A DNA stretch of 64,000 nt. Source: Vitrella brassicaformis CCMP3155 (taxonomy: Eukaryota; Protista; Chromerida). Below the pieces are notes generated by a model. The model was not told the origin of the DNA, ran no database searches, and was given only the letters and a program-made list of their open reading frames with translations. The first letter of the stretch is position 1; the number at the start of each line of letters is the position of its first letter. The DNA lies in contig CDMY01000571.1 of assembly GCA_001179505.1 (NCBI GenBank), forward strand, positions 248,001-312,000. Reading direction: 5' to 3'. This document shows positions 55,814 through 64,000 of this stretch, piece after piece. The position numbers were made by a program, and so were the translations under genes.

Positions 55814-57396
55814 CCTGCCTGGTTGCCATGTCTCGCCGCTTCCTTCGTCGTCCATGTCTCGTTCATCCGCGTCTGTTTGATGTCTGTCGGCCTGCCTGGA
55901 CCCTCTCTCTCGTCTTTCTTCTGTTCCCTATCGTGGCTAGCTATCGGATCCCATCGATCGCAGCTCCAACCGTTCACCCATGCCCATCGCCCGCAGTCCC
56001 TCCCTCCCTCCATCTCGCCTCGCCCCTCCCCAGCCGCCCTGAGTCACCTCTGCCCAACCCAGCAAACGCGGCCAACAGTCGCTGAACCCTCCATCGTCTT
56101 AGATGGGCGCCCTTTCATCTATCGTCATCTGCTTATCACAAGGGCACCAGAGTGCTGGCTACGTACTGGCTGAGTCGACCTTTGCGGTGCGGCCGCCTGA
56201 CTGATCCACTCGTCTGTCTACGCCATCCCAATGGGCCGCCCGGACTTTGGCTGACGACGTCCACACCCCTCAGCGACTCGTCGCCGCAGCAGACCAAAAC
56301 AAGCCATCCACCGCCCTCTATGTATCGATATGGATTGCCTGCTATCGTCTGTCCGGTGTTTGTGGTCCGTAGCCAGCACAGTGCCCCATTCAGAAGCCGG
56401 CCCCTTGCTTATGGCGTCGATCGTGCCCTACGTCTCTCGCTGCCAAGGCGAGCACAAAGCAGACATCAGAGGGCGAGCACTCGACGGCTGTTCTCAGAAG
56501 ATCCCTGTCGCGATCCAACCAACGCCCAAACCAACAGGGCAGCGGCGTCGATTCTTCATCAAGTCGGTCCAGAGGCGGCACATCCATCTGCGTCTCGTCC
56601 ATCCGCCTGACGGCAAGTCTTATGACGGCTCGCGACGTCCATCGACAGCCAAGCCGGCCCAGGCGCAGCAGGGCACAGCCGCCAAGCAATCCGTCTGAGG
56701 GCCCATGTGCGCGTGTGAAGCCGAGCGGCGTGTCGCGCCGAGGGCGTGTGATAGAGCATCTGCTCGGGGACCTCTTTTGGCTCTTCTTATGTCTCGTCTC
56801 ATCTGCTGACTGCATCCCCCCCACCCCCACCCCCGCAAGCAGCATGATGGTATGGCCCACCGGCTGAGAGACAAGAGAGGACTCGAGGGAGTGTCAGGGA
56901 AGGAGCCACCGAGTGGGATGCGCACGAGAGGGACGAGGGGGGCGGGCAGGGAGAAGTGGCGATAGTCGGACAAGTCATTTGCGGCAGATTGATAGCATTC
57001 ATCAGTGGTCTTGCTAGAGAGGCTGATAGGTTGCAGGTTGACGCGTACATGTATATGTGTGTGTATGACACAAACCCGATATGGTACCTTCGTGTGTGAA
57101 TGTATGAGATACATTGACGTGTGAAGGTGATCGATCAATCGTTCATGGCCACCGGCGTGAGGCTTTTGCATGTCATAAATGGCGTGGGTAGCCATGCAGG
57201 GTGGTGTCTCCGATGCTGTATGTGTACCCAGCTCATGAGAGAGTGACAAGCGTGTCCGCTGACTGATAAAACAGACCAGCCCCATTCACCCACCGACAAA
57301 GTGACTAACAGGTGTGGTTGAAAAAGTGACAAACCACTAAGAAAACACCACCATGCATCTATCTATCTATGTGTCTCCCTCGCCGCCACCCGCATC

Positions 57397-60300
57397 TCAA
57401 GAAGCGAGTATGCTGGCTACCTCGTGGTAGGCTCTCTTGGGCTTGTAGTCGCGCGTGAACAGCAGAGGGTGGTCGCCGCTGATCAACAGAAGCCAGCGAC
57501 ACAATGCACGGTTGCGAGGTGAATGTTCAACGCTCGATTCATCCTCACCGCAGCCATGTCGCTCTGTCGGTGAAGCCCCACAGGACGAAGCCCACACAAT
57601 TGGGCTCCTCCAGGCAAATCTTCAGCAGAGAGCCGTACACCATCGCCTGACAGACAGAGACACACCACAGGGGTGCAACGAATGTCCCCTCCCGTCTTGC
57701 TGTCAGTTCACCTGAATGTACTGTAACTCTGGGGTGAAGGTCGCGCACGGCGCCCACTTCCCGTCCTCCCAGGAGCCACAGGGCACATCAACTTCGGTGA
57801 AGCACACCTCCACACCTATTGCAGCATACCTGAATGGGCATTACCCACACATACACACACACTTTGGCTACAGAGTGGTGTGGGCCAATGTGGATTACCT
57901 CCGTATGTTCTCTCGGACGCCGTCAAAGTCAGCAAAGGCTGTGGTGATGTGCGTCTGGAATCCGACGCCATGCACAGTGAATGATCGCTGCAGAAGCCCC
58001 AATATCATGCCGTAAACAGCAGCGCTCTGAGACAAGAAAGAGACGGACGGCAGATACGTGCGGTGCTCATTCATATGTCTCATCTTGCCTTTCTGCCTCG
58101 GCGCGAATGGGGTGTGGCTGTGAGGATACTGTAGTCGTTGTAGTACATGCGGGCCTTGTTTCCGGGCCGCGCCTTCTGCACCATGGCTGCTGTGCGGAAG
58201 GATATCTCCACCCAATCTGGGACTTTCGACAGCCAGCTCTGCCGCCACTTGGGGTTGCTGACTGGATCTGCGGTGGGCTGATCATCATCCACAGCTGCAG
58301 ACAGACACACAGAAGGGGCCAAAGGGGTGTGCGGCGGCATGTCTCGTTCTTGCCTTCGTTGGCCACGTCAAAATGAAGCATGTGCGGCATGTCGATATAA
58401 TGCTCCATCACCCCCTCCACCTAATGGGCAAAGGATGATTGCAGAAAGTACCTTTCGATTGGCATGATGCGCTTCTTGCCTGCTTGATGATGATGTCTCG
58501 AAGTTCCTCCTTTTTGGTCTTGAAGATCCATCCAGGGACCCCGGAGTACCTGCGCACATGGAACGACAAAAAAAAAGTGGGCTCTTCTTTGTGCAGCGCC
58601 CTCTTATGTCTCACCAGACAGCAGCGTGGAATCGCATCATTTGCCCGTTGGTCTTGGCGAGGTCCGCCATCTTGTCGCAAGATGCGAAGTTAAACTTGGT
58701 GGCAGTGGGACGGATCCACGACATCTTGCACTCGTTCTCGGCAACTAACGAATTGAACCTGATGTGTAAGCAGGCAGATTAGAGGAGTAAGGGCATCACT
58801 TGTCGCTGGCTTACTCTCTCGCAAGGACGTCTCTGTAAGTTTGGCCACCGACGAACCAGTTTGAAGCGGCTGCACCGATGTAGAGCTTCTTCTTGTCAGC
58901 CAGTGCGCGCAATGAGCCTGCAGGAGAGTCCAGAGATACGCCATCGGAACGCTCTGTTTTGAGGTACCTGCCTCGCCCTGCACAGAGGGCGCTGCGAAGC
59001 CACGCAGTCTGAAGTCGACTGAAGAAGTGGGTGCGTATACACGGCCTGATGATGACAAAACAGACAGAGTATGTGTGGACCAGCCACTTTGCTATCCGTC
59101 GGCTGGCTTACGGTCGAAATGGCAGGGCGGTCTCATGGTGTCTTCGCAGGTCTTGGTGAAGTCAGTGACGATCTTGTCTCCACAGCAGTTGGGCCGTCCG
59201 CCTGGACGATTCTCGCATCCGACGCCCCCACATGTGCCACAGTATGCCGGGCAACACGCATCATTGGCACTGCACAGACCATCCCATAATGGCAGCTTTG
59301 TGTAGTGTGTCTAATCATCTCCTTACGCGTCATATGTTCCGCCGAGCTGTCTGGTGCAGAAGGACGCGTGGCTCGTGACAGGGTATGTGAGAAGAAGGCT
59401 GGGAGTCAGGTTGCACGGCGCCGTGTGCAGCCCGCACTGACGATCTGTCTTCTTGATGGCGTTGGCGCAGCAGTTCTGAGGCCCAACTGACAAAAGAAAC
59501 GAGGCCTGAGACATGGAGCAATCCATCCCTGTGCTTTACGTGGCAGTTTGTGGCATTCGGCGCCGCCGCATCGAGTGCATTCCTTCGGGCAGCACACAGG
59601 GCCGTTGTCGTTCCAGTAGCCGTTCACCTTGTCGCACAGAAAGTGGCCCTCACTCTCACTCAGCGGAGACATATCTGTGCAGACATTGTGGGGTATATGA
59701 TGGGGAATTTTTTGATGGTCTCACGTACCCTCAGCGCAGTACTTAGGCCCCGACACGACGGGCCCTGGCACAGCGGTCTTGCCGCCAGCTGCTGCGGCTC
59801 CCTTGAGAAGGCAGTTGGCGGGCGGCCAGGTGAATGCCTGCCAAGACCAAAAGTAGCACTCCGGCTCTGCCTGACAATGCCTCTGGCACTGCTGGGGAGA
59901 GACACTCTGGGGCACTGCATAGATGTCGCTGCCTTTGTACTCGGTCCTCTCGTGAAAGCAACCTGGCGACACAAAATGGTGATGTGGCCATGTTTTCCGC
60001 GTCCTGTGTGTATTTGTGTGCTGACCAGCAGCTTGTCCGCATAGCAAGTCGCCCGATATGGTTGCTCCAGGAGACCACTTTCGCTCGCCAGGCATCCAAG
60101 ACTGCAACGCCATCCAGGGTCTGCTGAAAAGCTGTGTGCGCTTGGGTAACTTACCTTGAGGTAGCACTCATTTGTTTTCGTCTGAAAGGAGTAGAACTTG
60201 CACATGGCCGTGCGGTGACAGGCCAGGTGACACATCTCGGCAGAGGAAACCTCAAGCGGCTTCGGCTGGAGGTCGTTGCCGGGGTAGTCAAAGTTTCCCT

Positions 60301-62356
60301 TCCAGCAGGCTGACAAAATGACCAAGAAGACAATGAGAGACATGCTGCGATCTGGATATTTCTCCTATGTGCACCTTCGGAGCACTGCCCAGGGCCGGAC
60401 ACGGCATTGTGTTCCGTGTGGTAGAATGGGAATGTCCTGACGATGTCCGACTTGTACAGGAGGCACTGCAGTGGCCCCAACAGGTAGCTGAACCGGCGAC
60501 ACTCAGAGTCCATCGCACACTCCTGAACGGAGACATTGTGAATACGCCCAGAATTAAATGCATGAATAGCTGTCCTCACCTGTTGGCACTCTGCGGCCGA
60601 GTGTATGCCTTTGATCTCTCTGATAAAGGGCCCCTCATATTTGGTGTAGGGCTCGTAGCAATCTGATGGAAGAGAGAGACAGAAACAGCGTCAGAGGCGT
60701 GTGAGAAAGAAACCTTCCATGGAATGTACCATATAGACATCTCTTTGGTCCAGAAATGGCACTGGTGTCATTTGTGCGACCAGTCATCGTCCGCATCAGC
60801 ACACAATCGCCCCTCGCCTTGAGATATGTGAAGAACTTGCAACCGCTGGAAGCGCTGCACAGCGCCTGGCATGCTGGTGCCGAACCGACGTTTGTTGATG
60901 TCGCCATTGTATCGCCCTTGTAGCTGTAGTCGTACTCCGCACAGTGGGGCACTTTCTGTGAGAAAAAGGACGGAGAGGAGTGCAAGCATGCCTGCTTGGA
61001 GTATGGAGCGCTTCCCTCACCTCGAAGGCCATGTCGCTTGTGATCGTCTGAATAGAAGACAGGCCTCGTAGCGGCAGAACACCGTACGCTTCAGCCCCCT
61101 ACGCGACACATATTGATTCGCTGCTCGTCTATATACAGGGCATTGCAGCTGGGCACTCTCACCGTGTTGTCTGTGAGCTTCAGTAAGTATCCCGGCCGCC
61201 ACTTGTTGTTGGGCCATGAAACCGAGGCAAGAGAGCTCACATTCACCTGACAGAGATAACGAGCCATGCAGCTCTCTCAGCTTTGAAAAGCTGTGTGTGT
61301 CATACCGTGAACGCCCCGAGCTCCTTGTACGTGTCGACGAACGCCTTGCTGTCCTTGTGCCAGATGGACATCTTCACGATACCCACTGGGGAGTTGGACA
61401 CTTGCAGCTGACAGACACCAGGATACCGTGTCTCCTCGGTCTCACTGCGTGTTCTCCTTTATGTCTCTCACCGCCAGCCAGTAGGCCGTGCTATCGGCAG
61501 TGAATGTGAATTTGAGAGTCGTCCCCGTATGAGCGAGACCTCTGCAGACATTCGATTGCAATCGAACACATCATCGTCAGCAAGCGGTTTTCTCTGCATC
61601 CCTCCTTACAGCTCTCGCACGGTGGCGATATCAGAGGCGTTCTTGTCTGTTGCGTCCGCATCAGCCAGAGGAGAGACACTTGCGGCAGAGGGACACGGGA
61701 TTGCATGCCATCGTATCTGCGCAGAAGAGAGAAACAGGAAATATGCTTGAAGAATCAAGTGTCGTCCTTCGAACCTCTGCAGTGTCGTTGAGCCCCAGAT
61801 TGGCATCCACTCGGAGGTCCCCATCAGCACATTCATGGCAGCTGCACACATGAACCATGCAATGTAATCCTTCAGCGAGCATCGTGTTTCTTGGTTGCTC
61901 ACAGGTCAACGACAAGGGCGCGGAATGTCTTGACAGGTAAGTGGCCGCCCGCAGCCGAGAGGAGCTCAACCTGTGCACAACAAATCACAGGAGCGAGGTA
62001 CAAGACGATGAATGACTCTGCATTCTCACCTCAAGGCAGGTGCCGCAGGCTTCGAGGCCACCATGGACATCAAAGAAAACGGGACTGGCAGCAGCAAGCG
62101 TGTCGATACCGTCACTTCCAGTGGCCGTCAGGGGAGAGCACATGCCTGGCCGGTCCTCACTGATGGTGAGATCTGGCAGTGCCCTCCCTGACACGAGCAT
62201 CCACGAGCAATGAATGGGTGAAGAGCCAATGCATGCGCGCAAGGGCATCCAGGTGATATGCTTACCATGCAAGTTGTCCTCGTATCCATGTATTCCCGTG
62301 CACAAGCTCACTACGGAGAGAAAAAGCGCCACAAACGTCGACATCCAAGGAGACAT
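57397..62356 (-). CDS. Secreted multidomain protein: expansin-like (DPBB + CBM63) - 4x PAN/apple - 2x Cys-rich repeat - GH10 glycoside hydrolase (xylanase-like)
   Basis: Signal peptide; AAASPVFF..GGLEACGTCLE, VVDL-CHECADGDL, IRWHAIPCP, YWLA|VQVSNSPVGI; four C..C...C PAN units ending ISG(P/D)..C; GH10 motifs SLRALADKK.LYIGAA, ENECK, MRFHAAVW, FDVANE, YYNDY, GVGFQTH, FTEVDV, LWGFTD, DYKPKRAY. Confidence 0.85.
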
Positions 62357-62395
62357 TCAAGTTTACAACACAGAGAACGCGCATCCTACCCCCCC

Positions 62396-64000
62396 ATGAC
62401 CATGATGCTGCGCTTTTTGGCTTTTTTGGCGCTTGCGTTCATCGTGGCATGTGCGGGGGACGACGCTCCACCCACCAATGACGCCCCTCCCGCGGTTGAT
62501 CTCGTTGAGGGGCTTGACCAACTCCAGGTGAGCAAACCATCCGCCGATGGGAGATGGGTGGACCTTTGTGACGGCTTATCCATCCCTTCGTTGGTGGTGT
62601 CTGATGGTCTGCTCAGGGACTGTCATTCACTAACGCCACGGAACCTGATGCACCGCTACGTGAGCTGAAGAGGGAGCAAGGGCCGCTTGGGGCTGGGCGG
62701 GGAGGGTGGGGCCATGAGATCTTTGCGTGTTCAGGGATGCTCAAGGCCAAGTCCTTCCGACATCTCTTCAAAAAAAGCAAAAAGAGCAACAAAAAAGGTG
62801 GGATAAGACCATTGGTGCCGTCAAGGCAGTCCACGCACCATGCTCTTTCTATGCGTCCTTGATGGGTTGCCGGTTGTGCAGGTACGCTTCGGTTCCTGGC
62901 TCAGAAGAAGAAGATCTACGTTGGTGCGGCCATCAACCAGGTACCATTCATGGGCTCACGCAGAGAGGCTAGCGAGGGGGCGGTCAGGCATGACATTTCT
63001 CGCTGGTTGATGATTTGCTGTCTGTGTTTGATGGGTGGGTTGATGGATGGATGGATGCAGTGGAACCTGAAGAAAGCGCAATACATGAACACAGTCGCCA
63101 GGGAATTTAGCATGATCGTTGCGGAGAACGAATGCAAAATGAACAATATAGTCACACCCAAAAGTACGCCAACCCGAACACACCGAAACACAGAGAATCA
63201 CCCCTGCAAGTGACTGTCTCCCTCTTTGTGCTCATCCATCAATTTGAACTGCATCACCGACATCAGAGCAGTACAACTACGGCACGTGTGACCGCATTCT
63301 CAACGTGGCCAAGAAGAACGGTCAGGAGATGCGCTTCCATGCCCTCGTCTGGTACAGGGCGGCCCCCAAGGTGCTGCAGGCGGAGTCGAAGGCCAAGGTT
63401 GCCGCCTCACTCAAGAAGTTCTGTACCACCGTCACCAAGCGCTACGTCGCCAAGGGCGTCAGATGGTTCGACGTCGTCAACGAGGGTCAGTTAGCAGTCA
63501 CCAGGAAGCCGACGGGTCGCTGATTGAGAAAGGTCATTGCTTCCCCCTTTTGTTTGTTGTCTGTCTCTTACATTCATCCATCCATTTGCCAGCGTTTGCT
63601 GACAAGCAGCCGAAGAACAGCATCAACAAGCCCTCGTGGCGCAAGGCGTGGCCGTACACCAAGCTCCCCAACTGGGCCGAGGTCTCACTGCGGGCCGCCG
63701 CCAAAGGCGCCGGAAAGAAACGCAAACAGACACGGTAAGAAGTGTGACAACAGAGCAAAAAGCCACCCGTCCGTCAGTCACTTATGTGCGTGGTGCATGT
63801 CTGCACGTATGCAGTCTCATGTACAATGGTCAGCATGACCGAGAAGGGGAGAGATGGACGGAGAGAAAAAGAGGGTGAGCACATGTATATGACCATGTGT
63901 GTGCCTTTGTTGCGCAGACTACGGCATCGAGAGCATGAAGGGCTACATGAAGGGCAAGTCCGACGCCGTGTTTTGGATGGCCAAGACGTTCAAGAAGCGC
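62396..64000 (+). CDS. Secreted GH10 glycoside hydrolase (xylanase-like), runs off the right edge
   Basis: Signal peptide MTMMLRFLAFLALAFIVACAG; REFSMIVAENECKM, KNGQEMRFHALVWY, WFDVVNE, DYGIE. Confidence 0.85.

What the first reader, a model, noticed from the sequence alone, without database searches (positions are those of the whole stretch)
57397..62356. Expansin-CBM63-PAN4-Cys-rich-GH10: a one-chain wall-loosening, adhesive and hydrolysing protein in an apicomplexan relative
Seen: phase-consistent GT-AG exons join a signal peptide, an expansin-like double-psi barrel plus CBM63-like domain (YWLAVQVSN), four PAN/apple domains, two CC-x3-C-x2-CGG-x2-C repeats and a GH10 barrel with both catalytic Glu (FDVANE, FTEVDV). 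Known: EXLX1-type microbial expansins loosen cellulose/xylan networks; PAN/apple domains are glycan-binding adhesins in apicomplexan micronemal proteins; GH10 enzymes cut xylans. Inference: this is a self-contained machine for attaching to and breaching xylan-containing walls (algal neighbours or host, or its own cyst wall), linking a micronemal-type adhesin module to a degradative enzyme. I do not recognise this architecture.
Basis: partly seen in the sequence, partly recalled or inferred. Interest (0 to 1): 0.9.

Follow-up and report, generated by a model that had tools for sequence, protein, structure and literature searches.

The report
Expansin–PAN–GH10 wall enzyme of Vitrella
A real, expressed 28-exon gene of the coral-associated alga Vitrella brassicaformis (a photosynthetic relative of malaria-type parasites) joins a cellulose-loosening expansin, four PAN/apple sugar-binding domains, two unknown cysteine-rich modules and an intact xylan-cutting enzyme in one secreted protein, a combination I found nowhere else and which most likely remodels the alga's own cellulose/xylan wall.

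Summary
On the minus strand, 62356..57397, 28 exons encode a 1097-aa protein. One spliced transcript contig runs across the gene. The public Vitrella brassicaformis CCMP3155 gene model is letter-for-letter the same protein.

**Domains**
- **Signal peptide:** present by inspection only.
- **Expansin module (bacterial EXLX1 type):** real but divergent. hhalign against nine EXLX1 proteins gives 97.4% probability, E 1.3e-11. It scores below curated family cut-offs and is absent from the public annotation.
- **PAN/apple domains:** four, each with six Cys. Their nearest relatives are coccidian multi-PAN and microneme proteins.
- **Cysteine-rich repeats:** two 10-Cys repeats with no known family.
- **GH10:** full length (Pfam E 8e-71), with both catalytic Glu and the conserved GH10 motifs.

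No search here found another protein with this architecture. A published survey of expansin fusions lists only CBM1, CBM2, CBM32 and GH5 partners.

**Interpretation**
The "wall-breaching, microneme-linked machine" reading is only partly supported. The sister chromerid's wall is mainly cellulose with 4-linked xylose and galactans, and the gene is transcribed in the RNA-derived runs I laid. I therefore favour self-wall loosening and trimming (about 0.55) over attack on foreign walls (about 0.27).

It is a new variant of known modular CAZymes. Unchecked scan notes report related fusions elsewhere in this genome.

The parts
57397..62356 (-). Whole CDS: 28 exons, 27 introns, 1097 aa (= P0003, Vitrella brassicaformis CCMP3155, contig CDMY01000571.1)
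   Evidence: Spliced contigs; splice model; identity to the public protein; organism
62288..62356 (-). Predicted signal peptide, about residues 1-23 (hydrophobic core FVALFLSVVSL)
   Evidence: Read from the translation. No signal-peptide predictor was available, so this is inference.
61693..62266 (-). Expansin domain 1 (DPBB-like), residues about 31-136, exons 1 (last base) to 5. Contains GMCS, ACGTCLEV and VVDLCHECADGDL (candidate key Asp D114).
   Evidence: Pfam EXPB1_D1 E 0.0035 and DPBB_1 E 0.12, both below cut-off. NCBIfam NF041144 stretch to profile positions 36-97. BLASTP to Clavibacter CelA. hhalign. MAFFT.
61535..61692 (-). Insertion/linker of about 30 aa between D1 and D2, absent from the bacterial EXLX1 proteins
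   Evidence: Gap in hhalign and MAFFT alignments
61087..61534 (-). Expansin domain 2 (CBM63-like), residues about 167-253, exons 6-9. Y184-W185 sit at the conserved aromatic pair.
   Evidence: NCBIfam NF041144 stretch to profile positions 102-147, E 6.4e-5 alone. hhalign 97.4%. Alignment.
60737..60943 (-). PAN/apple domain 1 (C280-C348, six Cys), within exon 10
   Evidence: PAN_1 E 1.6e-9 on the exon alone; Cys positions
60382..60660 (-). PAN/apple domain 2 (C352-C425), exons 11-12
   Evidence: Four PAN stretches in the whole protein; exon 12 PAN_1 E 0.0022
60039..60307 (-). PAN/apple domain 3 (C429-C500), exons 13-14
   Evidence: PAN_4 E 4.6e-11
59736..59960 (-). PAN/apple domain 4 (C506-C580), exon 15
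   Evidence: PAN_4 E 1.3e-9; 328 library hits, led by coccidian multi-PAN proteins
59413..59636 (-). Cys-rich repeat 1 (C596-C652, 10 Cys; CCPKECTRCGGAEC)
   Evidence: Regex match and internal alignment. No family in Pfam, NCBIfam, PDB or the Atlas.
59122..59358 (-). Cys-rich repeat 2 (C671-C730, 10 Cys; CCPAYCGTCGGVGC)
   Evidence: As for repeat 1. The AF2 model is unusable, pLDDT 41.6.
57415..58915 (-). GH10 catalytic domain, residues 761-1092, exons 20-28. Acid/base E887 (58355-58357), nucleophile E1011 (57793-57795).
   Evidence: Pfam PF00331 E 8.3e-71, profile positions 1-309 of 311. Colinear exon hits. Alignment to 1xyz, E 1.6e-48.
62396..64000 (+). Head-to-head neighbour: separate secreted GH10 paralogue (410 aa in the public model, runs off the window). 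Its ATG is 39 bp from this gene's ATG.
   Evidence: Sequence; gene table of L001; tblastn exon identities 30-51%

Best explanation
What is shown. This is one nuclear gene of Vitrella brassicaformis. It encodes a secreted 1097-aa modular carbohydrate-active protein with these parts in order: signal peptide, a divergent bacterial-type (EXLX1) two-domain expansin, four PAN/apple domains, two copies of an unclassified 10-Cys module, and a GH10 glycoside hydrolase with complete catalytic machinery.

Proposed mechanism (inferred). The protein is secreted into the alga's own thick wall.
- The expansin module, through the aromatic face of its D2 domain, and the PAN and Cys-rich modules dock the chain on cellulose microfibrils and on matrix glycans or glycoproteins.
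- The expansin loosens cellulose-matrix contacts without hydrolysis.
- The tethered GH10 then cuts beta-1,4-xylan-type matrix chains exposed nearby.
- The result would be local wall loosening for cell enlargement, or for opening the sporangium wall. That is an autolysin-like wall-remodelling enzyme, not an invasion device.
For: Architecture and expression.
- Spliced contigs cross the introns, and a single 6632-nt contig spans the gene.
- The ORF is open and identical to the public model.

Domain identities.
- GH10: E 8.3e-71, and the conserved motifs match 1xyz: ENExK, H..W, NE, GFQxH, TE.D, WGFTD.
- Expansin: NCBIfam E 7.5e-8 with two colinear stretches; BLASTP to the expansin part of Clavibacter CelA, E 6e-5; hhalign 97.4%, E 1.3e-11 over 130 columns. 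The Atlas feature neighbours that carry a family are DPBB/Expansin_C/Barwin types, apart from one CBM10 cellulase cluster in which 12% carry Expansin_C.
- PAN: four domains above the Pfam cut-offs.

Self-wall reading.
- The wall of the sister chromerid Chromera velia is about 80 mol% glucose, with 61 mol% 4-linked. It also holds 2.0% 4-Xyl, 0.7% 2,4-Xyl and 8% galactose, which the authors read as cellulose plus heteroxylan, xyloglucan and galactans (PMC9293442). Substrates for every module would therefore be present at home.
- The transcript is present in two 2015 RNA-derived runs, one at high word depth.
- Chase et al. argue that eukaryotes with cellulosic walls use expansins for their own wall extension, and they list Vitrella as the only alveolate with EXLX homologues (10.1101/637728).
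- In oomycetes, which also have cellulosic walls, PAN/apple joined to a cellulose-binding module (CBEL) serves wall integrity and adhesion to cellulose (PMC3532174).
- A diverged GH10 paralogue sits head-to-head with this gene. Unchecked scan notes describe a GH10/expansin/PAN family elsewhere in this genome. That pattern suits a housekeeping wall toolkit.
Against: - No localisation, activity or wall-composition data exist for Vitrella itself. The wall data come from Chromera.
- The growth conditions of the RNA runs are unknown to me, because ids and metadata were coded.
- EXLX1-type expansins and GH10 enzymes are typical tools of microbes that act on other organisms' walls. The expansin is closest to bacterial ones, which also fits an acquired foraging tool.
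- The expansin module may be only a binding module. Its N-terminal TxY motif is not conserved. hhalign places Arg at the key Asp position, whereas BLASTP and MAFFT place D114 there. The third CBM63 aromatic residue is not conserved.
- Both AF2 models failed, so there is no structural confirmation.
Confidence: 0.55

Rival explanations
1. An outward-directed tool. The protein is secreted to bind, loosen and digest walls of other organisms or detritus, for example neighbouring algae, endolithic or macroalgal xylans, or plant debris. The purpose would be nutrition, settlement or entry into a substrate or host.
For: - The expansin is of the bacterial EXLX1 type, and its best pairwise match is the plant-pathogen protein CelA.
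- Known expansin-GH fusions, such as GH5-expansin, occur mostly in plant pathogens (10.1101/637728).
- The nearest solved GH10 relatives are bacterial xylanases, and the closest multidomain relatives carry Pfam families that I recall as typically bacterial, such as Big_9 and CBM9.
- The PAN domains resemble coccidian microneme and PAN adhesins.
- Woo et al. link chromerid extracellular proteins to cross-species interactions in the coral holobiont (PMC4501334).
Against: - To my knowledge Vitrella is a walled phototroph with no described predatory or wall-penetrating stage.
- The transcript is present in the RNA-derived runs laid.
- The sister chromerid's own wall offers all the presumed ligands.
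- There is no evidence of apical targeting.
Confidence: 0.27
2. Mainly a structural or adhesive wall protein. The expansin and GH10 parts would act as carbohydrate-binding modules rather than as a loosening agent and an enzyme. The protein would cross-link cellulose, xylan and glycoproteins, like CBEL or oocyst-wall proteins.
For: - The expansin D1 motifs are degraded (TxY lost, Asp position ambiguous).
- PAN plus a cellulose-binding module gives a non-catalytic wall/adhesion protein in oomycetes.
- The protein holds 44 Cys in its PAN and Cys-rich modules.
- An unchecked scan note mentions GH10 pseudo-enzymes elsewhere in this genome.
Against: - This GH10 keeps both catalytic Glu and the conserved GH10 motifs over the full profile length.
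- Such conservation is unexpected for a pure binding module.
Confidence: 0.1
3. An annotation or assembly artefact. Two or three adjacent genes (expansin, PAN protein, GH10) would have been wrongly merged.
For: - The transcript contig also runs into both neighbouring genes, so contig continuity alone does not prove a single mRNA.
- One of the 28 listed joints is not in my model.
Against: - All 27 introns are removed in frame, leaving one open 1097-codon ORF with no stop or start signal between the domain blocks.
- The domain blocks are joined by ordinary short introns of 50-78 nt.
- The independently made public model is identical.
Confidence: 0.04

Closest known systems
Bacterial expansin-glycosidase fusions (Clavibacter michiganensis CelA: GH5-CBM2-expansin; Xanthomonadaceae GH5-expansin)
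   Same: An EXLX1-type two-domain expansin and a wall glycoside hydrolase in one secreted chain. The expansin part aligns directly to CelA and to nine plasmid-borne EXLX1 proteins.
   Different: - The enzyme here is GH10 rather than GH5.
- The expansin is N-terminal.
- Four PAN domains and two Cys-rich modules lie between expansin and enzyme.
- The gene is eukaryotic, with 27 introns.
- The survey in 10.1101/637728 lists CBM1, CBM2, CBM32 and GH5 partners only.
CBEL-type proteins of oomycetes (CBM1 + PAN/apple)
   Same: A cellulose-binding module joined to PAN/apple domains in a secreted protein of an organism with a cellulosic wall. CBEL acts in wall integrity and adhesion to cellulose, and it binds galactose/GalNAc glycans (PMC3532174).
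   Different: - CBEL has CBM1 rather than an expansin/CBM63 module.
- CBEL has no catalytic domain.
- No sequence relationship beyond the PAN fold was tested.
Coccidian multi-PAN/apple proteins, including putative microneme proteins (Toxoplasma, Besnoitia, Neospora, Cystoisospora)
   Same: They hold the closest PAN domains by sequence: about 35% identity per domain, and whole-protein E down to 6e-92 because of many repeats. The six-Cys apple pattern is shared.
   Different: - Among the 149 other best PAN hits, none has an expansin, Cys-rich or GH10 part related to this protein.
- Those proteins are adhesins or wall proteins without enzymes.
- Localisation of the Vitrella protein is unknown.
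GH10 endo-beta-1,4-xylanases (e.g. Clostridium thermocellum XynZ catalytic domain 1xyz; Streptomyces Xyn10A 1e0w)
   Same: Full-length match, both catalytic Glu, conserved motifs.
   Different: - Only about 30-35% identity to the closest multidomain relatives.
- An extra Cys-containing insertion follows the nucleophile motif (residues about 1015-1035).
- Substrate is untested.

Membership tests
Glycoside hydrolase family 10 | Full-length match to the GH10 (beta/alpha)8 profile | tested here: met
   PF00331 E 8.3e-71, 239 bits (cut-off 22.1), profile positions 1-309 of 311. 142 PDB GH10 chains match, best 1xyz at E 1.6e-48.
Glycoside hydrolase family 10 | Acid/base Glu in the NE motif and nucleophile Glu in the TExD motif | tested here: met
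   FDVANE (E887) aligns to WDVANE, and FTEVDV (E1011) aligns to FTEIDI of 1xyz
Glycoside hydrolase family 10 | Endo-xylanase activity | not testable with these tools
   Needs an enzyme assay
Expansin, EXLX1 type (D1 DPBB + D2 CBM63) | Significant, colinear profile match to both domains | tested here: met
   hhalign against 9 EXLX1 proteins: 97.4%, E 1.3e-11, residues 74-253. NF041144 E 7.5e-8 with D1 and D2 stretches in order.
Expansin, EXLX1 type (D1 DPBB + D2 CBM63) | Score above the curated family cut-offs | tested here: not met
   NF041144 31.9 bits against a cut-off of 100. EXPB1_D1 18.1 against 27. DPBB_1 13 against 28.8. Expansin_C not detected.
Expansin, EXLX1 type (D1 DPBB + D2 CBM63) | Conserved D1 Asp of the (H)xD/LDLS motif (D82 of B. 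subtilis EXLX1, from my own knowledge) | tested here: inconclusive
   BLASTP and MAFFT align D114 to the invariant Asp with a 2-residue gap. hhalign, ungapped, puts R116 there.
Expansin, EXLX1 type (D1 DPBB + D2 CBM63) | Aromatic triad on the D2 binding face | tested here: inconclusive
   Y184-W185 sit at the conserved aromatic pair. The invariant Tyr of the DYNxF motif aligns to a non-aromatic residue.
Expansin, EXLX1 type (D1 DPBB + D2 CBM63) | Two-domain fold, and wall loosening without hydrolysis | tested here: inconclusive
   The single-sequence AF2 model failed, pLDDT 35. No homologues were found to build an alignment. Activity needs a creep assay.
PAN/apple domain | Profile match above the gathering score, and the six-Cys pattern | tested here: met
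   PAN_4 95.7 bits and PAN_1 94.7 bits, four stretches. Six Cys in each of residues 280-348, 352-425, 429-500 and 506-580.
Apicomplexan micronemal PAN adhesins (MIC4-like) | Storage in micronemes and release at the apical end | not testable with these tools
   There is only sequence similarity of the PAN domains to coccidian PAN and microneme proteins
CBEL-like wall/adhesion proteins | CBM1 paired with PAN/apple, and no catalytic domain | tested here: not met
   Pfam finds no CBM1, and a GH10 domain is present. The resemblance is functional only.

The most novel reading that the evidence does not exclude
PAN/apple domains of the apicomplexan lineage may first have served as wall-glycan targeting modules of carbohydrate-active enzymes in the free-living, cellulose-walled ancestor. 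This protein, and the PAN-GH10 paralogues noted elsewhere in the genome, would be survivors of that state. Micronemal PAN adhesins would then have arisen by shedding the enzymatic parts and redirecting the lectin modules to host glycans. The symmetric phase-1 introns around PAN domains 2-4 would be the trace of the exon shuffling that moved them.
Probability: 0.12. Interest if true: 0.8.

Novelty: new variant of a known kind. Interest (0 to 1): 0.55.

Why it matters
- **A concrete candidate for chromerid wall biology.** How chromerids build and open their thick cellulosic walls is unknown. The Chromera wall paper notes that not even cellulose synthases are annotated. This expressed protein bundles a loosening module, lectin modules and a hydrolase, so antibodies, assays and knock-downs can address the question directly.
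- **An added expansin fusion partner.** It adds GH10 and PAN to the short list of natural expansin fusion partners.
- **An earlier job for the PAN/apple domain.** It shows the apicomplexan-type PAN/apple domain working beside a wall enzyme in a free-living relative. This bears on how parasite adhesins were recruited.
- **An annotation gap.** The expansin module is missing from the public annotation, which lists only GH10 and PAN.

Tried and rejected
- **Automatic intron search.** An exhaustive search timed out twice. A codon-usage Viterbi gave a wrong model for exons 1-7. It was replaced by hand splicing, which then matched the public protein exactly.
- **Pfam on single exons.** It did not detect the expansin.
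- **PDB search of the N-terminus.** phmmer found nothing even at E 10.
- **Word-index homologue searches.** The whole protein found only itself. The N-terminus found nothing. These searches have limited sensitivity, so absence is weak evidence.
- **Scans with the N-terminus.** Viral and metagenome contig scans found no relatives. tblastn of the N-terminus against plasmids gave only chance-level hits.
- **AF2 without an alignment.** It failed for the N-terminus (pLDDT 35) and for the Cys-rich region (pLDDT 41.6), so no fold searches were run.
- **Cys-rich region.** The Atlas scores were all 0.74 or lower, with mixed families (galaxin, CBM10, granulin, chitin-binding). I reject these as assignments. 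The only PDB hit, DHX29 at E 0.078, is chance.
- **Supplements of the expansin survey.** They hold no Vitrella accession, so I could not tell whether this protein was among their Vitrella homologues.


Full report
**1. Gene structure**

The finding lies on the minus strand. I asked for public runs holding the stretch and laid four of them on 57300-62450.
- Two runs (X2, X3) cover the stretch without gaps and behave as genomic DNA.
- Two runs (X1, X6) hold contigs that skip short segments with CT..AC or CT..GC ends on the plus strand. These are GT-AG or GC-AG introns of a minus-strand gene.

The junctions were placed in three steps.
- Fifteen were listed explicitly. After allowing for the stated ambiguity, each resolves to a canonical intron. 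Three of them are GC-AG.
- Six further introns were fixed by the exon lengths implied by contig coordinates.
- The last six, in the 5' third, were read by hand from the sequence.

The result is 28 exons and 27 introns of 50-78 nt. The ORF is open for 1097 codons, from the ATG at 62356 to the stop ending at 57397.

A search with exon 15 alone returned a 1097-aa library protein, P0003. It is identical to my spliced translation. It is an unnamed protein, 'endo-1,4-beta-xylanase' in UniRef, of Vitrella brassicaformis CCMP3155, on contig CDMY01000571.1.

In run X6 a single 6632-nt contig is the only record laid, and it has depth in all 30 bins. One spliced form therefore spans every domain. The same contig also runs into both neighbouring genes. 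Continuity alone is thus not proof of a single mRNA. The uninterrupted frame and the identical independent gene model make a merge artefact unlikely. One of the 28 listed joints is not in my model and remains unexplained.

**2. Domains**

- **GH10.** Pfam on the whole protein gives Glyco_hydro_10 at residues 761-1092 with E 8.3e-71. Hits on the separate exons are colinear. Against solved structures the best match is 1xyz (E 1.6e-48). The alignment shows FDVANE (E887) under WDVANE and FTEVDV (E1011) under FTEIDI. The ENExK, H..W, GFQxH and WGFTD motifs are also conserved. The GH10 looks catalytically competent. A Cys-containing insertion of about 20 residues follows the nucleophile motif.
- **PAN/apple.** Pfam gives four PAN_1/PAN_4 stretches, consistent with the single-exon hits. 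Each domain has six Cys.
- **Cys-rich repeats.** Residues 596-652 and 671-730 each carry 10 Cys and the CC-x3-C-x2-CGG-x2-C motif. They align to each other far better than shuffles do (92 against 35 +/- 6). They match no family in Pfam, NCBIfam or the PDB, and nothing convincing in the ESM Atlas. The AF2 model is unusable. They remain unassigned.

**3. The expansin claim**

This was the weakest part of the observation and needed the most work.
- Pfam gives only sub-threshold hits: EXPB1_D1 at E 0.0035 and DPBB_1 at E 0.12.
- NCBIfam's EXLX1 model (NF041144) matches at E 7.5e-8, with one stretch in D1 and one in D2 in the right order. The score of 31.9 bits is far below the curated 100.
- The ESM Atlas feature search with residues 25-275 returned mainly DPBB/Expansin_C/Barwin clusters. 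The top score was 0.93, to an unannotated giant-virus cluster. That cluster's model resembles EXLX1 (TM 0.62-0.75), but it is not shown to be a relative.
- For a direct test I fetched Clavibacter michiganensis pCM1, whose CelA carries a bona fide expansin module. BLASTP of the Vitrella N-terminus against CelA gives E 6e-5, aligning ACGT.L.V, the D.CH.C motif and the aromatic pair of D2.
- I then collected eight more plasmid-borne EXLX1 proteins and aligned them (A1). The profile comparison gives 97.4% probability, E 1.3e-11, over 130 columns covering residues 74-253.

So the module is a real, divergent EXLX1-type expansin. It has an insertion of about 30 residues between D1 and D2. Several details remain open.
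- BLASTP and MAFFT place D114 under the invariant Asp of the LDLS motif. hhalign places R116 there.
- Y184-W185 occupy the conserved aromatic pair of D2. The third conserved aromatic residue is not matched.
- The N-terminal GxATxY motif is not conserved.
- Single-sequence AF2 failed (pLDDT 35). No homologues for an alignment could be retrieved.

**4. Is the architecture found elsewhere?**

- The whole-protein search found only the protein itself.
- A search scored on the GH10 part, among proteins of 603-1920 aa, found 11 GH10 proteins at 29-34% identity. They carry Big_9, cadherin-like or CBM9 domains, and none has PAN or expansin.
- None of the 149 other best PAN hits contains anything related to the N-terminus, the Cys-rich region or the GH10.
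- The expansin survey of Chase et al. names Vitrella as the only alveolate with EXLX homologues. It places its expansin next to an actinobacterial/myxobacterial clade. It lists natural fusions only with CBM1, CBM2, CBM32 and GH5. 'GH10' does not occur in the text.
- The searches used have limited sensitivity, so absence elsewhere is provisional.
- Unchecked first-reader notes of this scan report related fusions on other contigs of the same genome: expansin-Cys-GH10, PAN-PAN-GH10, pairs of 4xPAN-GH10, expansin-PPC-PAN and expansin-trefoil. I could not fetch those sequences. If the notes are right, this protein is the fullest member of a lineage-specific, domain-shuffled family.
- PAN domains 2, 3 and 4 are each bounded by phase-1 introns, a pattern compatible with exon shuffling.

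**5. Function**

- **Shown:** a secreted-type N-terminus, carbohydrate-related modules, an intact GH10, and transcription.
- **Inferred:** the target.

The only chromerid wall analysis, on Chromera velia, finds the following (PMC9293442):
- about 80 mol% glucose, of which 61 mol% is 4-linked (cellulose, calcofluor-positive);
- 2.0% 4-Xyl and 0.7% 2,4-Xyl, read as heteroxylan/xyloglucan;
- about 8% galactose.

Cellulose for the expansin, xylan for the GH10 and galactans for PAN-type lectins would thus all be present in the organism's own wall. CBEL's PAN-containing protein binds Gal/GalNAc (PMC3532174). The gene is also transcribed in the RNA-derived runs laid. In addition, organisms with cellulosic walls are argued to use expansins for their own wall extension.

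I therefore favour an autolysin-like, self-wall remodelling role (about 0.55). The alternatives are:
- an outward-directed wall-attacking or adhesive role (about 0.27);
- a mainly structural, non-catalytic role (about 0.1);
- an annotation artefact (about 0.04).

The PAN domains are closest to coccidian multi-PAN proteins and putative microneme proteins. That supports 'apicomplexan-type PAN' as a sequence statement only. Nothing speaks to micronemal localisation.

**6. Verdict**

- The protein is already in public databases, annotated as a GH10/PAN xylanase. Its expansin module and the overall architecture are not described in anything I could find.
- It is a new variant of the known kind 'modular CAZyme / expansin-glycosidase fusion'. 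It has added interest for chromerid wall biology and for the pre-parasitic history of PAN/apple domains.

Noticed in passing
window 62357-62395 and 62396-64000 (+): A second, separate secreted GH10 gene (410 aa in the public model) lies head-to-head. Only 39 bp separate the two start codons, so the 5' ends of the two transcripts must overlap or share a tiny bidirectional promoter. Its GH10 is only 30-51% identical per exon to this one.
   Followed up: partly
window 58027-58088, 58295-58353, 58421-58479 (-): Three consecutive GC-AG introns lie within the GH10 part of the gene. All three are supported by spliced contigs. The other 24 introns are GT-AG, and all are 50-78 nt long.
   Followed up: partly
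window 59729-60662 (-), exons 11-15: PAN domains 2, 3 and 4 are each flanked by phase-1 introns (symmetric 1-1 modules). This is the classical signature of exon shuffling or duplication of extracellular modules.
   Followed up: no
window 57300-62450: read laying lists 28 joints, but the gene model has 27 introns. One joint, not shown in the output, is unexplained. It may be an alternative splice form.
   Followed up: no
window 57300-57396 and beyond (L001 16544-18080): The 6632-nt transcript contig of run X6 continues 2156 nt past the 3' end of the laid stretch. It probably merges with the convergent downstream gene (348 aa, no Pfam) through overlapping 3' UTRs.
   Followed up: no
ESM Atlas hit, not in the window: The nearest Atlas cluster by language-model features to the expansin module is an unannotated 279-aa protein family of Nucleocytoviricota (score 0.93). 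Its predicted structure resembles bacterial EXLX1. This may be an expansin family in giant viruses.
   Followed up: no
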